Below, one piece after another: positions 44,541 to 50,132 of a stretch of DNA of 64,000 nt. Positions within the stretch are counted from its first letter, which is position 1, and every line of letters begins with the position of its first letter. A model generated the notes under the pieces. The model worked only from the letters and a program-made list of their open reading frames with translations, did not search any database and was not told where the DNA came from. Made by a program: the position numbers and the translations under genes. The stretch spans positions 124,001 to 188,000 of the IMG/VR virus record IMGVR_UViG_3300024262_006558; one strand, 5' to 3'.

Positions 44541-44993
44541 CTACTCAATAATACAACATGTAGGTTTAATAGTAAGAGTGATATAGCGCACGTCACTACT
44601 TGAATAATCTAATTCGCCAAAATTAACCTTAACACTCTCAACTACAATCACAAAGGTTTCAATAACTACCCCAGTCGGATCAAGGCTTGACATTCTAATA
44701 GTAAACATTTCTAACTCACCATTCAATTTCCTATCTTTACAGTAATCAATTAAATTAATCATAGATGAGCTTGTTGATATTCCATGCCCATATAAATCAA
44801 TAATATCTATGCTCATCTCTTCCCAAGACATATTTTGCAAATTGTAGTGAGGTAAATCAGCTCTCTGAACAGCAAACTCTGGAATATTAAAATGTTCATC
44901 AAATCTTAATGAGAATCTATTCCTTCTCATTGGCTCTTCTATAGGAGTAGCGATCAATTTTTTATTATATGCGTGATAAAACTTTTTCCTCAT
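44541..44993 (-). CDS. MRKKFYHAY-leader tail-tube-like protein (gp19-like, internally shortened)
   Basis: EPMRRNRF, W, LDPTGVVIETF and VNFGELDYSSSDVRYITLTI match T4-gp19-type tube proteins. Confidence 0.75.
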   Translation of the reverse strand: MRKKFYHAYNKKLIATPIEEPMRRNRFSLRFDEHFNIPEFAVQRADLPHYNLQNMSWEEMSIDIIDLYGHGISTSSSMINLIDYCKDRKLNGELEMFTIRMSSLDPTGVVIETFVIVVESVKVNFGELDYSSSDVRYITLTIKPTCCIIE

Positions 44994-45007
44994 AATTCAA
45001 ACTTTTA

Positions 45008-45868
45008 CTAAAACCAGCCCCATCTTCTTCTTGATCTATTCTTTGTGCGTCTCCATTGCTGAGTTTCTGCAACAGGCTCATCTTCGGGAACTTCTTCAGG
45101 TTCAGAAATCATCTCAGGCTCTTCTTGAACATCTGGCTGCACAGGCTCGACAGGCTCTACAGGCTCTGGATTAATCATATTGACAGGCTCTTGTGGAGTT
45201 GTTTTAGGCGCCTCTGGTGATACTTCTGGATTATCTGGAGTAACATTACTCGCTGGCTCTCCAGGGTTCTCATCTGTTACTGTAGGGGTTTTCTTAGGTA
45301 CTCTTGTAGGTTCTTGACTAAACTGATTCTGATCTTCTCTAGACTCTTCTTCATCTGGAGTAGGAATAGGTTTGTCAGTTAAGTTTGATTGGTAATTTTT
45401 AGCAATGTTTGGTTTGTATGTAGCTTCTACACTTTTGATATCTTTATCATTAGGGTTGTATCCCGTAATGTTATCGCTAAAGAATCTGTCAGTAAACCAC
45501 ATTCCTTTAATTCTATCTGCTCTAAACATTCTCCAGTCGTTTTCAGCTTCAGCGCTTCTAACTCCTGTTTTTTTGGCTGCTTTTTCAGATTGTCCAATAA
45601 CATGTAACCCTCTAACGACTTTATTACCTTTAGAGTTAGTTCCCATAACCACTGGCCTTACAACACGATACTTCTGTACGGGCATTTCTTCGCCTTTATA
45701 AAGAATTCCTATTTCCCTACCTTGCTCAATTGCCTGCTTCATCATATCAGCGCTAAAAGCCACTCTCTCACCACTCTTTGCAAGTAGCTTAGTTTTAGTG
45801 GCCATATCAGCTTCACTGATGATTCCAGCTAGTAATTGTGATCTTTTCTTAAAGGACTCTGATAGCAT
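45008..45868 (-). CDS. WYL-domain-like protein with Pro/Glu-rich tail
   Basis: AIEQGREIGILY...RVVRPVVMG...WRMFRADRI; PVE/PE-rich low-complexity C-terminus. Confidence 0.6.
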   Translation of the reverse strand: MLSESFKKRSQLLAGIISEADMATKTKLLAKSGERVAFSADMMKQAIEQGREIGILYKGEEMPVQKYRVVRPVVMGTNSKGNKVVRGLHVIGQSEKAAKKTGVRSAEAENDWRMFRADRIKGMWFTDRFFSDNITGYNPNDKDIKSVEATYKPNIAKNYQSNLTDKPIPTPDEEESREDQNQFSQEPTRVPKKTPTVTDENPGEPASNVTPDNPEVSPEAPKTTPQEPVNMINPEPVEPVEPVQPDVQEEPEMISEPEEVPEDEPVAETQQWRRTKNRSRRRWGWF

Positions 45869-45872
45869 GTAA

Positions 45873-45879
45873 ATAAATA
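45873..45879 (-). promoter_or_regulatory. Putative late promoter TATTTAT, 4 nt before ATG
   Basis: Minus strand reads TATTTAT-TTAC-ATG. Confidence 0.5.
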
Positions 45880-45923
45880 GTGCGAAACTTTAATATGTCA
45901 AACTTTATCACTACATTTTATTT

Positions 45924-46118
45924 ATGAGAAAGAAGTTTTACCACGCATTTAAAAAACATAAAATAATATTTATGTCACCTGGAATATACACCAGGGAAAT
46001 AGATAGGTCTTTTGTGATGGTGTCAGGAGCAACTAATTCAAATTTTATAGCAGGTATTGATCCAGCCGTTAAGTCTCCAAGAATTGATATGCTAAAGGTT
46101 TTTGGATCAGCATCATGA
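45924..46118 (+). CDS. MRKKFYHAF-leader peptide carrying a tail-sheath N-terminal motif
   Basis: IFMSPGIYTREIDRSFV equals the SPGVYxREID N-terminal arm of gp18-type sheath proteins. Confidence 0.7.
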   Translation: MRKKFYHAFKKHKIIFMSPGIYTREIDRSFVMVSGATNSNFIAGIDPAVKSPRIDMLKVFGSAS

Positions 46119-46267
46119 GAAAACGGTTCTATCACGCATATAAAAAGAAAAGTATGGCTCAAAAGTTTTTAGAGCTTAGTAATATTATTCATGAGAGAGC
46201 TGTGAGAGGTTCAGCGAACTTTATAATAACTAGCACGGCTATGGCAAATAAAATAAAAAAAATATGA
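46115..46267 (+). CDS. MRKRFYHAY-leader peptide (50 aa, not in ORF track) carrying a major-capsid-like segment
   Basis: MRKRFYHAYKKKSMAQKFLELSNIIHERAVRGSANFIITSTAMANKIKKI; ATGA overlaps at both ends; cf. gp23-type I...T.RG.gNFII.S. Confidence 0.7.
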   Translation: MRKRFYHAYKKKSMAQKFLELSNIIHERAVRGSANFIITSTAMANKIKKI

Positions 46268-46515
46268 GAAAAAACTTCTACCATTCTTATAACGAATTCA
46301 AATACCCTACTGTAGAATTAGGAGAAACTGTTTTTTCGATAATAGATAACTGCGATTATACCATGACCTACACCATGGATACATGGAGTGATTCATGCTC
46401 AGGTCTAGATAGTGACATATCCAGCATTGAGTACAGGCTTAAGACAGCTGAAGAAACTATCGATAGATTACTTGTCGAGATGAAAGAGATGAAAGATCAA
46501 ATGCAAAAACCATAA
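46264..46515 (+). CDS. MRKNFYHSY-leader protein with C-terminal coiled coil
   Basis: 83 aa, ATGA-coupled to the previous family member. Confidence 0.7.
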   Translation: MRKNFYHSYNEFKYPTVELGETVFSIIDNCDYTMTYTMDTWSDSCSGLDSDISSIEYRLKTAEETIDRLLVEMKEMKDQMQKP

Positions 46516-46569
46516 AAGAGTTTAATTTCAATTATAATCTTATTAGATTTTACATAAATGATAGAAACT

Positions 46570-46773
46570 ATGGCGGAGAATGAGAACAAGAACATTCTAG
46601 ATCTTTTGCTCGATATTAAAGAACTAACGGATACAATTCAACCAGATGCAGAAAAAACCCTCAAAGGTAATAAAACGGCTGGCATTAGATTGAGAAAGCA
46701 GATGCAAGAAATAAAAAGACTTTGTCAAGATGTGAGAGACAAAGTTCAAGTTAGTAAAAATGTTACAGCTTAA
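46570..46773 (+). CDS. Hc1-like histone H1 family protein
   Basis: DAEKTLKGNKTAGIRLRKQMQEIK...R matches the GNKAAG.R.RK core of Hc1/Bacteroidota histone-H1-like proteins. Confidence 0.8.
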   Translation: MAENENKNILDLLLDIKELTDTIQPDAEKTLKGNKTAGIRLRKQMQEIKRLCQDVRDKVQVSKNVTA

Positions 46774-47174: not shown

Positions 47175-50132
47175 ATGGCTAAGAAAAACAAATATAAAGA
47201 TAGCGTAGTTCATATAAAGAAATTAAAGACAAATTATAGACTAACTTATGATTTTCTCAAATCTCTTACAGAATATATAAAATCATTTCCTAAAGAACAT
47301 TGGTCTATTCACAAAGAGCAGGTCATGGTGGGCGGGGAACTTAAACAGCAATGGTCCAGAGATATATCTGAATTCAAAATGGTTGATGTATTAGCGTTCC
47401 TAGTCGACAACTCAATCCCATTCAAATTTAGTAAATCCATAACAGAAAGAGAATTAAATGTTTTACGTAAAGAATATTTAGATCGACAGAATCGATTGAA
47501 AGATGCGCTTAGGGAGAAGTTAGATGGCATTGACATAAAAGGTATGGATTTCAGCTTTATGAAAATACAGCCTTATGAGTACCAACAACAAGCTGTTCGA
47601 TTCTTTGAGCTTAATGGAGGTATAGGGCTATTAGGGGATGCTCCAGGTGTAGGCAAGGAAATGCCTTTAGACACACCTATCCCCACTCCAGAAGGTTGGA
47701 AAACAATGGGGGATATGACGGTTGGTCAAAAGGTTTTTTCTAGAGATGGTGAAGTTTATAAAGTGAGAGGAGTGTATCCTCAAGGATCTAAAGATGTTTA
47801 TAAAATAACCTTCAATGATGGTAGCTCTACTAAATGTGGTTTAGATCACATTTGGACTGTTAGAGATAAAAATAGAAAGCGCAGAAATAAAGGGTGGACT
47901 ACAAAAACGATAGGTGATCTATTGGATAGCGGTTTAAAATATAACTTAGACGCCTCTAGAAAGTTATCTGGTAGAAAAGCTGCTCTCAAATGGGAGATAC
48001 CCACAACTAAACCAGTAAATTATAATAAGAAAAACTTATCAATAGACCCTTATATTTTAGGAGCTTTGATTGGAGATGGAAGTTTGACGGGATCATGTCC
48101 AGCTGTTTCCATACCAAATTTCCAAAAAGAAATCAAAGAAGAGATGGTTTCTAGATTAGATGAAGGGTATCATATGAGAAAGAATGATTATCCAAATTGC
48201 CCACAATATTACATCTCTCAAAAAGGATGGGGTGGACAAAGCAAAAAAAACAAATATCAACAAGAGGTTCTAAGTTTAAAATTAAACGTAAAATCTAGGG
48301 ATAAATTTATACCAAAAACCTATTTATTGGGATCTATAGATCAAAGAATTGATCTACTGAAAGGATTAATGGATAGTGATGGTAGTTGCGATAAAAATAG
48401 ATCAAATTATCACACTACATCTAAACGTTTGTCAATGGACGTTGTAGAATTAGTTCAGTCGCTAGGAGGCGTTGCAAAAGTTAACATCTATGATAGGTCT
48501 GCTGAAGGGAAGCCGACTGAATACAGAGTTAGGGTTAATGTTAATTTTTGCCCTTTTAATTTATCAGAAAAATCTAAACAGTGGAATCCAATAAAAACTG
48601 TTGAATCTAAATTAATAGAATCAATTGAAAAAGAGGCCTCTGAACAGCAGCAGTGTATTTCCGTAGATTCTCCAGACAACACTTACTTAACTGAAAGTTA
48701 TATTGTGACACACAATACCTGCTCGGCTTTTGCATATGCAGCTAAGCATCAGTATAAAACATTGATAATTTGTCCAGCCTCACTTGCTTTGAACTGGAAA
48801 AATGAAATAGTTAAGTTTACAAATGAAAAGGCTCACGTATACAAATACAAACCCACTAAAAAAAGCGGAAAGGTAAACTACGCAAAAGAAGACTCACTTT
48901 TCCATGTAATAAACTACGAATCACTTGATACCTATTTTAAATTTGAATACTCACATAAGTGTAGTAATTCAAATTGTAAATATGAAGAAGTATCTTTGGT
49001 TAAAAAATTTAAAGAGTGCCCTAGTTGCTTTAGTCCAAAAAGCGTTAAAAGCAGAAAAAAAGAACTTCTTGCTTTCGAAGCTAAAGATGGAAGCTTTATT
49101 AATATAGATGATTATGATTTAGTGGTTCTAGATGAGGCTCACTATATCAAGAACGATCAGGCTGAGAGAACTAAGTTATGCATTAAAGCATTAGGAGATA
49201 TCCCTAGAAAACTATTAGTTACTGGTACAGCAATAAAAAGTAAACCTATTGAGTTTTTCACTCTTGTTAACTTTCTATTCCCTGAGGAGTGGAAGAGTAG
49301 GCATCACTTTGGGGTAAGATATTGTGCTGGACATGAATCCAACTTTGGCTGGGATTATAATGGAGCCTCACATATACATGAGTTGTATGAGAGAATGTCA
49401 CCTTTTACTTTAAGAAGATTGAAGCAAGATGTATTAAGTCACTTGCCTCCAAAGACAAGATGGAATATACCAATTCAACTCACTCCAGCAGAAGCTAGAG
49501 AATACAAGAAAATAGAGCAGGAAACTATTACAATACTTTCCAATGGTGAAGCTATTGAAAAAAATCATCTTACGGTTCTTTTGGATTTAAAAAGCTTTAT
49601 TGCTGATATAAAATTAGATAGAGCCCTATCTCAAGTGCAAGACATTGTTGAAGGTGGTGAGAAAGTTGTTCTTATGTCTGAGTTTAGAAAATCAGCAGAG
49701 GGAGTTAAAGAGCATTTTGGAAAAAGCTGTGTAATGGTTCATGGTGGAGTTAGTAAAGAAGAACGAGATAATGCTGTTCACGCCTTCATGACGGACCCTA
49801 AGATAAAAGTGTTCAGCGGAACTATTATGGCTGCAGGAGTAGGGCTTACATTAACCTCATCTAGCACATTAGGATTTCTAGGATCAGCTTGGACTCCAGC
49901 AGATATGACTCAAGCGGAGGATCGTGTACACAGAGCGTCCACCACCTCAGATAAAGTTCATATTATAAAATGGATTTGTGAAGACACGATCGATGAAGAT
50001 ATTGAAGCCCTCTTAGAAGAGAAAGGGAAAATAGTAAACAAAGCCTTAGATAATACAAGTTCAATTGAAAGCGCTGAGGTTCTAAGTGGAAATATACAAA
50101 ATCAAATAATCGCTAGATTACTGAATGGATAG
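47175..50132 (+). CDS. SNF2/SWI2-family helicase with intein and Zn-ribbon insert
   Basis: PYEYQQQAV, GDAPGVGK[intein]T, IICPASL, INYE, LDEAHYIKN, VTGT, RRLKQDV, GVGLTL and QAEDRVHR. Confidence 0.93.
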   Translation: MAKKNKYKDSVVHIKKLKTNYRLTYDFLKSLTEYIKSFPKEHWSIHKEQVMVGGELKQQWSRDISEFKMVDVLAFLVDNSIPFKFSKSITERELNVLRKEYLDRQNRLKDALREKLDGIDIKGMDFSFMKIQPYEYQQQAVRFFELNGGIGLLGDAPGVGKEMPLDTPIPTPEGWKTMGDMTVGQKVFSRDGEVYKVRGVYPQGSKDVYKITFNDGSSTKCGLDHIWTVRDKNRKRRNKGWTTKTIGDLLDSGLKYNLDASRKLSGRKAALKWEIPTTKPVNYNKKNLSIDPYILGALIGDGSLTGSCPAVSIPNFQKEIKEEMVSRLDEGYHMRKNDYPNCPQYYISQKGWGGQSKKNKYQQEVLSLKLNVKSRDKFIPKTYLLGSIDQRIDLLKGLMDSDGSCDKNRSNYHTTSKRLSMDVVELVQSLGGVAKVNIYDRSAEGKPTEYRVRVNVNFCPFNLSEKSKQWNPIKTVESKLIESIEKEASEQQQCISVDSPDNTYLTESYIVTHNTCSAFAYAAKHQYKTLIICPASLALNWKNEIVKFTNEKAHVYKYKPTKKSGKVNYAKEDSLFHVINYESLDTYFKFEYSHKCSNSNCKYEEVSLVKKFKECPSCFSPKSVKSRKKELLAFEAKDGSFINIDDYDLVVLDEAHYIKNDQAERTKLCIKALGDIPRKLLVTGTAIKSKPIEFFTLVNFLFPEEWKSRHHFGVRYCAGHESNFGWDYNGASHIHELYERMSPFTLRRLKQDVLSHLPPKTRWNIPIQLTPAEAREYKKIEQETITILSNGEAIEKNHLTVLLDLKSFIADIKLDRALSQVQDIVEGGEKVVLMSEFRKSAEGVKEHFGKSCVMVHGGVSKEERDNAVHAFMTDPKIKVFSGTIMAAGVGLTLTSSSTLGFLGSAWTPADMTQAEDRVHRASTTSDKVHIIKWICEDTIDEDIEALLEEKGKIVNKALDNTSSIESAEVLSGNIQNQIIARLLNG
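47658..48716 (+). mobile_element. Class-3-type intein with LAGLIDADG endonuclease in the helicase P-loop (353 aa)
   Basis: Inserted at GK|T; starts EMPLDTPIPTPEGW; DHIW, QCISV and IVTHN give the WCT signature; LGALIGDGS and LKGLMDSDGS. Confidence 0.9.

What the first reader, a model, noticed from the sequence alone, without database searches (positions are those of the whole stretch)
46115..46267. Unannotated 50-aa tagged ORF with a major-capsid-protein-like segment
Seen: LELSNIIHERAVRGSANFIITSTAMA, in an ORF coupled by ATGA on both sides and missed by the 60-aa ORF cutoff. Established: gp23-type capsid proteins contain a conserved helix followed by RGx(G/A)NF(I/L)(I/V)xS. Inference: a capsid-epitope mimic completing a tube/sheath/capsid set.
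Basis: partly seen in the sequence, partly recalled or inferred. Interest (0 to 1): 0.7.

Follow-up and report, generated by a model that had tools for sequence, protein, structure and literature searches.

The report
Tagged capsid-protein fragment gene in megaphage
A 50-codon gene in a giant phage joins a 12-residue "address tag" to a diverged piece of the phage's own capsid protein; it is one of a conserved set of tagged fragments of capsid, tail and DNA-packaging proteins whose purpose is unknown, but which look like deliberately kept molecular mimics.

Summary
The ORF is real: window 46115-46267 (+), 50 aa, ATGA overlaps on both sides, coding-like codon usage, sequence reproduced by a second assembly. 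Residues 1-12 (MRKRFYHAYKKK) are a protein-level N-terminal tag. MRKxFY starts 29 ORFs of this 388.6-kb T4-like megaphage record, against 0 in the reversed-genome control.

Residues 12-40 match the helix-strand block of the phage's own gp23-type capsid protein (residues 403-431). Each test is marginal (E 0.003-0.1), but all point to the same block.

The ORF is one of at least nine tagged extra or partial copies of virion-building proteins in this genome: five non-overlapping capsid pieces, the sheath N-terminus, two tube paralogs and the terminase ATPase domain.

A 519-kb relative and other metagenomic phages carry the same kinds of fragment (E down to 1e-21) in a syntenic cassette. There they are joined to a different motif, TRxV(L/I)xEK, which fits the T4 prohead-protease site L/I-x-E.

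Best reading: a portable targeting or processing tag, closest to the T4 capsid targeting sequence, joined to a structural-protein mimic. The function is inferred, not shown.

The parts
46115..46267 (+). 50-aa ORF (the finding): tag plus capsid-protein-like cargo, stop included
   Evidence: sequence and ORF; called as a gene by JGI; coding-like codon usage in this frame only; sequence confirmed by a second assembly
46115..46150 (+). N-terminal tag MRKRFYHAYKKK (codons 1-12)
   Evidence: about 38 ORFs of the genome start this way. MRK.FY 29 against 0 in the control; extended RK.FY[HFIV][AGS]Y 12 against 0; synonymous codons vary (Arg AGA/AGG/CGT, Phe TTC/TTT, Tyr TAC/TAT), codon 4 is free and there is no conserved upstream DNA, so the constraint is on the peptide.
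46148..46264 (+). Cargo: diverged copy of the gp23-type capsid-protein helix-strand block (residues 12-50; the best-aligned part, 12-40, matches own capsid protein 403-431)
   Evidence: only 44% nucleotide identity to the capsid gene, third positions near random.
46115..46118 (+). ATGA stop/start overlap with the upstream tagged ORF
46264..46267 (+). ATGA stop/start overlap with the downstream tagged ORF
45924..46118 (+). 64-aa tagged ORF (MRKKFYHAFKKH...) carrying a copy of the tail-sheath N-terminus (IIFMSPGIYTREID against sheath VFLSPGVFTREQD)
   Evidence: jackhmmer hits the sheaths of two relatives (E 0.005-0.006) and the relative's sheath-fragment ORF (E 0.001). JGI started this gene at Met17, without the tag.
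46264..46515 (+). 83-aa tagged ORF (MRKNFYHSYNEF...), cargo unrecognised; possibly the counterpart of the third gene of the relatives' cassette
   Evidence: only weak hits; tag-YP... resemblance seen by eye
44541..44993 (-). 150-aa tagged tail-tube paralog (MRKKFYHAYNKK plus a gp19-like tube domain)
   Evidence: E 1e-11 to the genome's tube protein; phrog_4542 tail tube, E 5e-8; best relative is a G002 tube paralog carrying that phage's motif at the same place

Best explanation
The 50-aa ORF is a genuine, translationally coupled small gene with two parts.

Part 1, residues 1-12, is a lineage-specific, beta-strand-like tag shared by about 38 otherwise unrelated small proteins of this phage. It acts as a portable address or handle read by one common partner. 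The closest precedent is the roughly 10-residue capsid targeting sequence (CTS) of the T4 internal proteins, which loads arbitrary cargo into the prohead core for later ejection into the host.

Part 2, residues 12-50, is an old, diverged copy of the most conserved helix-strand block of the gp23-type major capsid protein. It has been kept at the amino-acid level.

The gene belongs to a conserved class in a clade of T4-like-capsid megaphages: extra, mostly partial copies of virion-building proteins (capsid protein, sheath, tube, terminase ATPase domain and, in a relative, the prohead protease), each joined to the clade's tag. The cargoes most likely act by mimicry of conserved surfaces of these proteins. 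They would either occupy host immune sensors that recognise them or cap the assembly of a competitor's homologs.

Shown: the gene, the tag family, the capsid-protein origin of the cargo (marginal for this ORF, strong for its sister genes), and conservation of the class across phages.

Inferred: what the tag is read by, and what the cargo does.
For: The gene is real.

The tag is a peptide-level signal:
- 29 against 0 occurrences in the control.
- Synonymous codon variation and no conserved upstream DNA.

The tag is modular and lineage-specific:
- Relatives whose capsid proteins are 62-76% identical lack it.
- G002 instead has R.[VI][LIV].EK 127 times against 4 in the control, with Arg coded by AGA, CGA, CGT and AGG.
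- The two motifs sit at the same place on orthologous tube paralogs and on terminase-N copies.

Cargo of this ORF: all place it on capsid residues 403-431.

Sister fragments:
- In G000 the pieces cover capsid-HMM positions 16-41, 77-116, 380-419, 439-466 and 527-573, without overlap.
- In G002 the fragments score E 1e-21, 1e-14 and 3e-11.
- A terminase-N copy passes the Pfam cut-off (30 bits).
- G002 has a tagged prohead-protease fragment.

Conservation:
- Public 126-230-aa proteins consist of the capsid propeptide plus N-arm bracketed by the motif.
- A three-gene cassette of mini-capsid protein, sheath N-terminus and a third gene is syntenic in G002, L151 and L153.

The fragment is old and under selection: nucleotide identity to the capsid gene is 44%, with third positions near random, yet the frame is open and the capsid-conserved residues are kept.

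T4-type head machinery is present: a gp23-like capsid protein and a Peptidase_S77 prohead protease next to it.

Precedent from the literature:
- The T4 CTS is the first 10 residues of the internal proteins.
- gp21 cleaves after L/I-x-E.
- Alt is processed at both termini.
- A non-cleavable CTS variant still targets (PMC9026906).
- The internal proteins are diverse defence-countering proteins that share only the CTS (PMC3012670).
- Bacterial Avs sensors recognise the capsid-protein A-domain, the tube protein, terminase and other core virion proteins (bioRxiv 10.64898/2026.01.04.697583).
Against: - No transcript, peptide or virion data exist for this phage; only a DNA run holds it.
- The 50-aa ORF has no homolog other than itself among 5.8 billion proteins, so its own conservation cannot be measured.
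- Its capsid-protein match is below every curated threshold and ties with an unrelated Pfam family.
- A language-model neighbour search pointed to glycosyltransferase fragments at chance-level scores. This is a reminder that helix-Gly-hydrophobic-strand is a generic pattern.
- The G000 tag has no Glu, so it cannot be a T4-type L/I-x-E cleavage site, and it shows no sequence similarity to the T4 CTS.
- In G002 the motif is often C-terminal or internal, and in two cases it aligns onto a native beta-strand of the cargo rather than being appended.
- A tail-sheath peptide inside a capsid has no precedent.
- A fragment that binds an immune sensor might trigger it rather than block it.
- The AF2 model of the mini-capsid family is low-confidence (pLDDT 48), so there is no structural support.
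Confidence: 0.4

Rival explanations
1. Gene debris. The capsid-, sheath-, tube- and terminase-like ORFs are decaying leftovers of duplicated or horizontally acquired structural genes. They lie in hyperplastic small-ORF regions. The tag is merely the common 5' end of that region's ORFs, picked up by recombination, and the cargo has no function.
For: - The fragments lie among arrays of small ORFs of unknown function.
- The 50-aa ORF has no ortholog.
- Fragment positions differ between G000 and G002.
- A GIY-YIG homing-endonuclease-like gene lies about 1.3 kb from the G002 cassette.
Against: - With synonymous sites saturated, neutral DNA would have lost both the open frame and the capsid-conserved residues.
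- The same fragment classes, the same breakpoints within the capsid protein (after about residue 60 and within the spine helix) and the same gene order recur in phages as distant as 67% capsid-protein identity.
- Partial copies are seen only for virion-building proteins, which make up about 2% of the coding DNA.
- Codon usage is coding-like.
Confidence: 0.13
2. Chance resemblance. The ORF is a real member of the tagged small-protein family, but its likeness to the capsid protein is a coincidence of a generic helix-Gly-hydrophobic-strand pattern.
For: - 13.3 bits against the Pfam cut-off of 24.4, with an equal-scoring unrelated hit, CTD8.
- PHROG E 0.12.
- The Atlas neighbours are glycosyltransferase fragments.
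- No counterpart of this particular capsid block was found in G001 or G002.
Against: - Five searches with different models all pick the capsid protein, and the same block of it.
- In the blind search, 10 real hits against 0 reversed decoys reach E <= 0.04.
- Four other ORFs with the same extended tag carry other capsid blocks, two of them at E 4e-6 to 1e-27 after iteration.
- The gene sits between a sheath fragment and near a tube paralog.
Confidence: 0.12
3. Own-assembly cofactors. The tagged capsid pieces (and perhaps the others) are prohead-core or scaffold-like accessory proteins. They co-assemble with the phage's own capsid protein through the copied segments and are then trimmed at the motif by the prohead protease. 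They are not mimics aimed at the host or at rivals.
For: - The best-conserved family is the capsid propeptide plus N-arm, bracketed on both sides by V(L/I)xE-K motifs that fit the gp21 site L/I-x-E (PMC9026906).
- A gp21-type protease is present.
- T4 core proteins are cut into pieces (PMC9026906).
Against: - Sheath, tube and terminase pieces have no obvious place in a prohead core.
- The G000 tags have no Glu.
- The helix-strand copied in the 50-aa ORF is buried fold core, not an interface. This is an inference from the general HK97 topology and was not tested here.
- G001 has mini-capsid ORFs without any motif.
Confidence: 0.15
4. The tag is a translation signal, not an address. MRKxFY would be an optimal start or early-elongation ramp for re-initiation at ATGA junctions in a host without Shine-Dalgarno pairing, and it says nothing about where the protein goes.
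For: - The tag always follows the start codon directly in G000, usually at ATGA or closely spaced junctions.
- C-ending Phe and Tyr codons are frequent in the tag: 23/38 and 21/38.
Against: - The equivalent motif in G002 and other phages lies 5-25 residues inside, at the C-terminus or mid-protein.
- Arg uses both codon families.
- Codon 4 is free while Phe and Tyr are fixed.
Confidence: 0.1
5. Silent cassettes. The fragments would be recombination donors for varying or repairing the capsid, sheath and terminase genes.
For: Partial, dispersed copies of essential genes resemble the silent cassettes of antigenic-variation systems (recalled analogy only).
Against: - 44% nucleotide identity, with a longest exact match of 8 nt to the capsid gene. 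That is far too little for homologous recombination.
- The fragments copy the most conserved blocks, not the variable ones.
- They are kept as tagged open frames.
Confidence: 0.02

Closest known systems
T4 capsid targeting sequence (CTS) on internal proteins IPI, IPII, IPIII and Alt
   Same: A roughly 10-12-residue terminal peptide is the only thing shared by many otherwise unrelated small proteins of one T4-type phage. The genes sit in variable regions. The signal is modular: T4 loads GFP and other foreign proteins through it. In relatives the motif ends in (L/I)-x-E like gp21 sites, and it can be N- or C-terminal, as in Alt (PMC9026906, PMC3012670).
   Different: There is no sequence similarity to MKTYQEFIAE (recalled from memory). 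The G000 tag lacks the Glu needed for cleavage. There are about 38 (G000) to over 100 (G002) bearers rather than a handful. Some motifs are internal. Capsid location is untested. No T4 internal protein is a fragment of a structural protein.
Propeptide-processed head and ejection proteins of giant phages (phiKZ, 201phi2-1, SPN3US)
   Same: Dozens of head proteins are processed after Glu at short motifs, with paralog families and large capsids (PMC9026906, PMC7411985 abstract).
   Different: Those motifs are S/A/G-x-E in a different phage lineage, and no structural-protein fragments are reported among them.
Gol peptide of T4 gp23 and capsid-sensing defences (Lit; CapRel; Avs7/8/10)
   Same: Short conserved segments or the A-domain of the capsid protein are what host defences read. 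The invariant core of the mini-capsid family (DLVSVQPLxxPxG) corresponds to the gp23 region aligned, which I recall as the Gol region. The 50-aa ORF copies an A-domain block (bioRxiv 10.64898/2026.01.04.697583 for Avs).
   Different: These are host sensors of the full-length protein. No phage-encoded capsid-fragment decoy is known to me, and none turned up in the paper searches. The Lit/Gol and CapRel details are from memory.
PeSL mobile promoter cassettes of T4-type phages
   Same: Repeated short elements at gene starts in hyperplastic regions, thought to drive modular shuffling (recalled).
   Different: PeSLs are DNA elements (promoter plus stem-loop). Here the constraint is on the peptide.
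Strand-donation tags (SpyTag/CnaB C-terminal strand; chaperone-usher N-terminal extensions)
   Same: A short terminal beta-strand with alternating hydrophobics followed by Y-K-P. The relatives' consensus RVVIIEKYKP resembles SpyTag AHIVMVDAYKPTK. The motif aligns onto native strands of the tube and capsid proteins.
   Different: This is a resemblance recalled from memory only. No catcher domain has been identified and nothing was tested.

Membership tests
gp23-type major capsid protein (Pfam PF07068) | Score above the curated gathering threshold | tested here: not met
   13.3 bits against 24.4
gp23-type major capsid protein (Pfam PF07068) | Complete HK97-type fold spanning the profile | tested here: not met
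   Covers profile positions 221-258 of 376 only; the ORF is 50 aa. It is a fragment, not a capsid protein.
gp23-type major capsid protein (Pfam PF07068) | Conserved helix followed by RGxxN(F/W)(I/V)(I/V)xS | tested here: met
   RGSANFIITS against own capsid protein RGGANWIVCS and T4 RGEGNFIIAS
T4-type CTS-bearing internal head proteins | Short terminal peptide shared by otherwise unrelated proteins of the same phage | tested here: met
   (29 against 0)
T4-type CTS-bearing internal head proteins | Tag ends in a gp21 site (L/I-x-E) | tested here: not met
   No Glu in MRKRFYHAYKKK or the other G000 tags. Met by the counterpart motif of G002 and the public homologs.
T4-type CTS-bearing internal head proteins | Genome encodes gp23-type capsid protein and gp21-type prohead protease | tested here: met
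T4-type CTS-bearing internal head proteins | Protein is packaged in the capsid and ejected | not testable with these tools
   Uncultured phage; only a DNA run is available
Motif-tagged virion-protein fragments of this megaphage clade (class defined here) | Clade motif at a terminus, plus cargo that is a partial or extra copy of a virion-building protein present full-length in the same genome | tested here: met
   Tag. Cargo. Full-length capsid protein.
Motif-tagged virion-protein fragments of this megaphage clade (class defined here) | Ortholog of the same fragment in related phages | tested here: not met
   No counterpart of capsid block 439-466 in G001 or G002, and none in the protein database. 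Sister fragments do have counterparts.
Anti-defence decoy or dominant-negative mimic | Binds a host sensor or a competitor's structural protein and changes the outcome of infection | not testable with these tools
   Host and sensors unknown; no complex prediction was attempted because no partner could be named

The most novel reading that the evidence does not exclude
A clade of T4-like megaphages keeps a dedicated 'mimic kit'. The kit consists of short, intrinsically unfolded copies of the most conserved surfaces of its own capsid, sheath, tube, terminase and prohead-protease proteins. Each copy is fused to a lineage-specific address tag that loads it into the capsid, or onto another common carrier. 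The copies would therefore be present at the start of infection, where they could blind host pattern-recognition defences that sense these hallmark proteins, or poison the assembly of competing phages. This would be the first protein-level decoy system built from fragments of a virus's own structural genes.
Probability: 0.2. Interest if true: 0.9.

Novelty: new variant of a known kind. Interest (0 to 1): 0.66.

Why it matters
Bacterial immunity is now known to read the conserved core of the phage virion: capsid protein, tube, terminase and portal. How phages answer that, beyond point mutations, is largely open.

A conserved set of tagged fragments of exactly these proteins would be a candidate answer. 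It can be tested directly by co-expressing the fragments with sensors.

Independently of function, the lineage-specific tags offer a way to find the cargo-loading system of uncultured megaphages, and a possible natural tool for loading proteins into capsids. The tags number 29-38 bearers in one genome and over 100 in another, and they have switched sequence between relatives while staying on orthologous proteins.

The finding also shows that sub-60-codon ORFs in phage 'junk' regions can be recognisable derivatives of hallmark genes.

Tried and rejected
- Database search with the 50-aa protein: only itself. The terminase-N copy likewise found only itself.
- DNA pattern for MRKxFYHAY in IMG/VR: no hit outside this genome.
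- Phage GenBank blastn of the locus: one irrelevant 125-nt hit.
- Rfam on the whole window: nothing, so there is no evidence for introns or structured RNAs that could explain the fragments.
- RNA data: none exist for this phage. The DNA run only confirms the sequence.
- AF2 of the mini-capsid family (alignment A1): pLDDT 48, uninformative.
- ESM Atlas neighbours of the 50-aa ORF: glycosyltransferase-4 fragments at 0.85 with 105 shared features. The tool itself rates that level as chance.
- Promoter inspection upstream of tagged clusters and structural genes: no clear early or late class by eye.
- Recoded stop codons as an explanation for the C-terminal motifs in G002: rejected, because TAA, TAG and TGA all follow them.
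- DNA-level repeat or MITE-like insertion as the origin of the tag: rejected by the codon variation.
- Gene-conversion cassettes: rejected by 44% nucleotide identity.
- Twin-arginine signal (RKxF resembles RRxF): rejected, because no hydrophobic region follows.
- Split intein or trans-splicing: no intein blocks, and the tag is too short.
- No complex prediction was run, because no binding partner could be named in advance.

Full report
WHERE WE ARE

The window is bases 124001-188000 of a 388,594-bp virus record with 34% G+C. The same DNA lies on a 494,080-bp JGI contig from a subsurface metagenome.

The phage has a T4-type virion module:
- a gp23-like major capsid protein, 552 aa, genome 99639-101297 (-), matching T4 gp23 structures at E about 1e-21;
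- a Peptidase_S77 (gp21-type) prohead protease beside it;
- a sheath of 793 aa and a gp19-like tube protein of 162 aa;
- a gp17-like large terminase.

Relatives by capsid protein include G001 (372 kb, 73% identity), G002 (518,809 bp with terminal repeats, 67%) and G003.

THE OBSERVATION

The ORF is exactly as described: 46115-46267 (+), 50 aa, with ATGA overlaps at both ends. A second assembler's contig matches it base for base.

Outside the tag, its codon usage scores like real coding sequence in this frame and like non-coding sequence in the other five. JGI's gene caller had in fact called it, so "unannotated" holds only for a 60-aa cut-off.

THE TAG

MRK.FY occurs 29 times in the six-frame translation and never in the reversed-genome control. 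The longer form RK.FY[HFIV][AGS]Y occurs 12 times against 0. With GTG, TTG and ATT starts included, about 38 ORFs begin this way.

Four of them lie in the window, at 44541-46515. Others form arrays at genome 371.5-373.6 kb and 223-229.7 kb.

The constraint is on the peptide, not the DNA:
- Arg is AGA, AGG or CGT.
- Phe is TTC or TTT.
- Tyr is TAC or TAT.
- Codon 4 takes 18 different codons.
- Nothing upstream is conserved.

THE CARGO OF THIS ORF

Residues 12-40 align without gaps to the phage's own capsid protein at 403-431: KSMAQKFLELSNIIHERAVRGSANFIITS against QTLITRVNELSAQIHKATLRGGANWIVCS. That is 11/29 identical and 19/29 positive, with a pairwise E of 5e-5. T4 gp23 reads ...IARQTGRGEGNFIIAS at the same place.

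Blind searches give marginal but concordant results:
- The best non-tag hit among all ORFs of the genome is the capsid protein, E 0.038.
- Pfam Gp23 scores E 0.055, below its cut-off and tied with an unrelated family.
- The only PHROG hit is a major head protein, E 0.12.
- A clade-specific capsid HMM searched against 16,537 small ORFs of three genomes gives E 0.036, with the best reversed decoy at 0.09 and 10 real against 0 decoy hits at that level.
- jackhmmer with the tag removed finds only a relative's capsid protein, E 0.0028.

A language-model neighbour search did not support the match, but it scored at the level the tool calls chance.

I take the capsid-protein derivation as likely, at about 0.8, but not proven for this ORF alone.

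THE CONTEXT THAT MAKES IT CONVINCING

The same extended tag heads four further ORFs, and their cargoes are other, non-overlapping blocks of the capsid protein:

| ORF (genome start) | Capsid-HMM positions | Region |
|---|---|---|
| 372556 | 16-41 | propeptide |
| 372059 | 77-116 | N-arm |
| 5484 | 380-419 | spine helix |
| 170115 (this ORF) | 439-466 | helix-strand block |
| 371769 | 527-573 | C-terminus |

After iteration the C-terminal and N-arm pieces reach E 1e-27 and 1e-17.

The tag also heads:
- a copy of the sheath N-terminus (window 45924-46118);
- a full tube paralog (window 44541-44993);
- a second tube-like protein inside the tail module (genome 94018-94494);
- a 239-aa copy of the terminase ATPase domain (genome 337373-338092; 30 bits, above the Pfam cut-off), while the real 585-aa terminase lies at about 56-58 kb.

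In a systematic scan, partial copies of a large protein of the genome that also carried a tag were seen only for the capsid protein and the prohead protease. The separate searches add sheath, tube and terminase. Tags also occur on cargo of unknown type and, in G002, on MORN-like repeat proteins.

RELATIVES

G001, G002 and G003 lack MRKxFY. G002 instead has a different peptide-level motif, (T)R(K/I)V(L/I)xEK.

- By the pattern R.[VI][LIV].EK it occurs 127 times, against 4 in the control.
- Arg is coded by both codon families.
- It lies near N-termini, within 12 residues of C-termini, or internally.

G002's motif flanks the same kinds of cargo:
- capsid positions 23-108 (E 1e-21), 340-403 (1e-14) and 513-573 (3e-11);
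- the sheath N-terminus;
- two tube paralogs;
- a terminase-N copy carrying the motif at its C-terminus;
- a prohead-protease fragment.

The best match of the window's tagged tube paralog is the G002 paralog that carries RLVLIEK at the same position. The two motifs are therefore positional equivalents that have switched sequence between lineages.

Where G002 has a motif in the middle of a capsid-like ORF, G000 has a stop, a start and the tag.

Public data hold at least ten further 126-230-aa proteins built as motif, capsid propeptide, N-arm, motif. Their invariant core is DLVSVQPLxxPxG. The cassette of mini-capsid protein, sheath N-terminus and a third gene is syntenic in G002 and in two unrelated contigs.

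G001 has untagged mini-capsid ORFs.

AGE AND SELECTION

The fragment shares 44% of its nucleotides with the capsid gene. Third positions match at 38% against 33% expected, and the longest exact match is 8 nt.

It is therefore neither a recent duplicate nor a recombination donor. An open, coding-like frame that still keeps capsid-conserved residues after that much divergence argues for purifying selection.

HOW IT MOST LIKELY WORKS

Shown:
- A short terminal peptide is shared by many unrelated proteins within one phage.
- It is replaced by a different peptide on the orthologous proteins of a relative.

The simplest cause of such concerted change is a single partner that reads the tag and co-evolves with it. 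This step is inference.

The closest documented system is the T4 capsid targeting sequence (PMC9026906, PMC3012670):
- The first 10 residues of the internal proteins suffice to load any cargo into the prohead core.
- gp21 then cuts after L/I-x-E.
- Alt carries propeptides at both ends.
- A variant that cannot be cut still targets.
- The internal proteins are otherwise unrelated, fast-evolving counter-defence proteins.

The G002-type motif, V(L/I)xE-K, fits the gp21 site, and both phages encode the gp21-type protease. The G000 tag has no Glu, so at best it would be a non-cleaved address.

For the cargo, the restriction to virion-building proteins points to mimicry. These proteins all oligomerise, and they are the ones bacterial Avs-type sensors recognise, including the capsid-protein A-domain and the tube (bioRxiv 10.64898/2026.01.04.697583). 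The mimic could be a decoy for host sensors or a dominant-negative cap for a competitor's assembly. Neither has been tested.

The AF2 model of the mini-capsid family is unstructured (pLDDT 48). That fits peptides which fold only on a partner, but it is not evidence for it.

RIVALS

The rivals are listed in their own section with weights:
- neutral gene debris;
- a chance match for this one ORF;
- cofactors of the phage's own prohead assembly;
- a translation ramp rather than an address;
- silent recombination cassettes.

The cassette model is refuted. The debris model is weakened by the conserved synteny, the conserved breakpoints and the saturated synonymous sites.

COMPARISON AND NOVELTY

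The ORF is not a capsid protein: it fails the length and score criteria. It works like, but cannot be filed as, a T4 CTS protein, because the cleavage site is absent and packaging is untested.

I found no description of tagged fragments of hallmark virion proteins in two literature searches. That is weak negative evidence.

I rate it a new variant of a known kind, namely tag-addressed accessory proteins of T4-type phages with an unprecedented cargo class. I give a 0.2 chance that it is a categorically new decoy system.

VERDICT

- Observation: confirmed.
- Interest: 0.66.

Noticed in passing
window 47175-50132 (+): A 985-aa SNF2-family helicase whose ATPase domain is interrupted by an intein-like insert with LAGLIDADG homing-endonuclease similarity (Pfam list; sequence).
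   Followed up: no
window 46558-46773 (+): A 71-aa Hc1 histone-H1-like protein (Pfam PF07432, E 6e-16), directly downstream of the tagged trio. This is an unusual nucleoid-type protein for a phage.
   Followed up: no
window 45008-45868 (-): A 286-aa protein with a Pro/Glu-rich C-terminal half, transcribed divergently from the tagged trio. Homologs are present in all five relatives tested, with 37-45% identity. Function unknown; there is a weak WYL hit.
   Followed up: partly
G000 genome 223268-229682 (+), outside the window: An array of at least 18 tandem, mostly ATGA-coupled ORFs of 67-153 aa, all beginning MRK[LQVRH]FY[IFLY]xP. This is a second sub-type of the tag, with entirely unrecognised cargo.
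   Followed up: partly
G000 genome about 234-260 kb (+): Many ORF 5' ends translate as ...ILVNLNKxIM.... This looks like a repeated upstream DNA element (a promoter or initiation-region cassette) read through by the ORF finder, and is distinct from the peptide tag.
   Followed up: no
G000 genome 271-294 kb: A large family of tandem repeat-containing proteins with many partial small-ORF copies on both strands.
   Followed up: no
whole record: IMG/VR labels the 388.6-kb record a 'provirus', but it is the first part of a 494,080-bp contig and its relative G002 is a 518.8-kb genome with terminal repeats. It is probably a free megaphage trimmed by a boundary predictor.
   Followed up: no
window 45924-46118 (+): JGI started this gene at Met17 (MSPGIYTRE..., 48 aa), which is exactly the sheath-like N-terminus without the tag. 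Either start is possible from sequence alone.
   Followed up: no
L153 4576-4866 (+); L095 (G002 430096-430806): In one relative the sheath-fragment ORF holds two tandem copies of the sheath N-terminus. A GIY-YIG homing-endonuclease-like gene lies about 1.3 kb upstream of the G002 cassette.
   Followed up: no
L148 3617-3701 (G000 genome 373617-373701, -): A tRNA-Leu gene lies immediately upstream of the eight-ORF tagged array that holds three of the capsid fragments.
   Followed up: no
G001, several loci; also G002 431058-432089, L151, L153: Another recurrent N-terminal peptide, M..(I/L)RK(I/L)I(K/R)E.(I/V)..LFE, which looks like an amphipathic helix. It heads about 10 proteins in G001 and the two genes just upstream of the mini-capsid cassette in G002, L151 and L153.
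   Followed up: no
G002 308534-308767 and 367880-368518: In two tagged fragments the motif is not appended. It aligns onto a native beta-strand of the parent protein: capsid GTVLIGHKG and the last strand of the tube. This suggests the motif can arise by remodelling an existing strand.
   Followed up: partly
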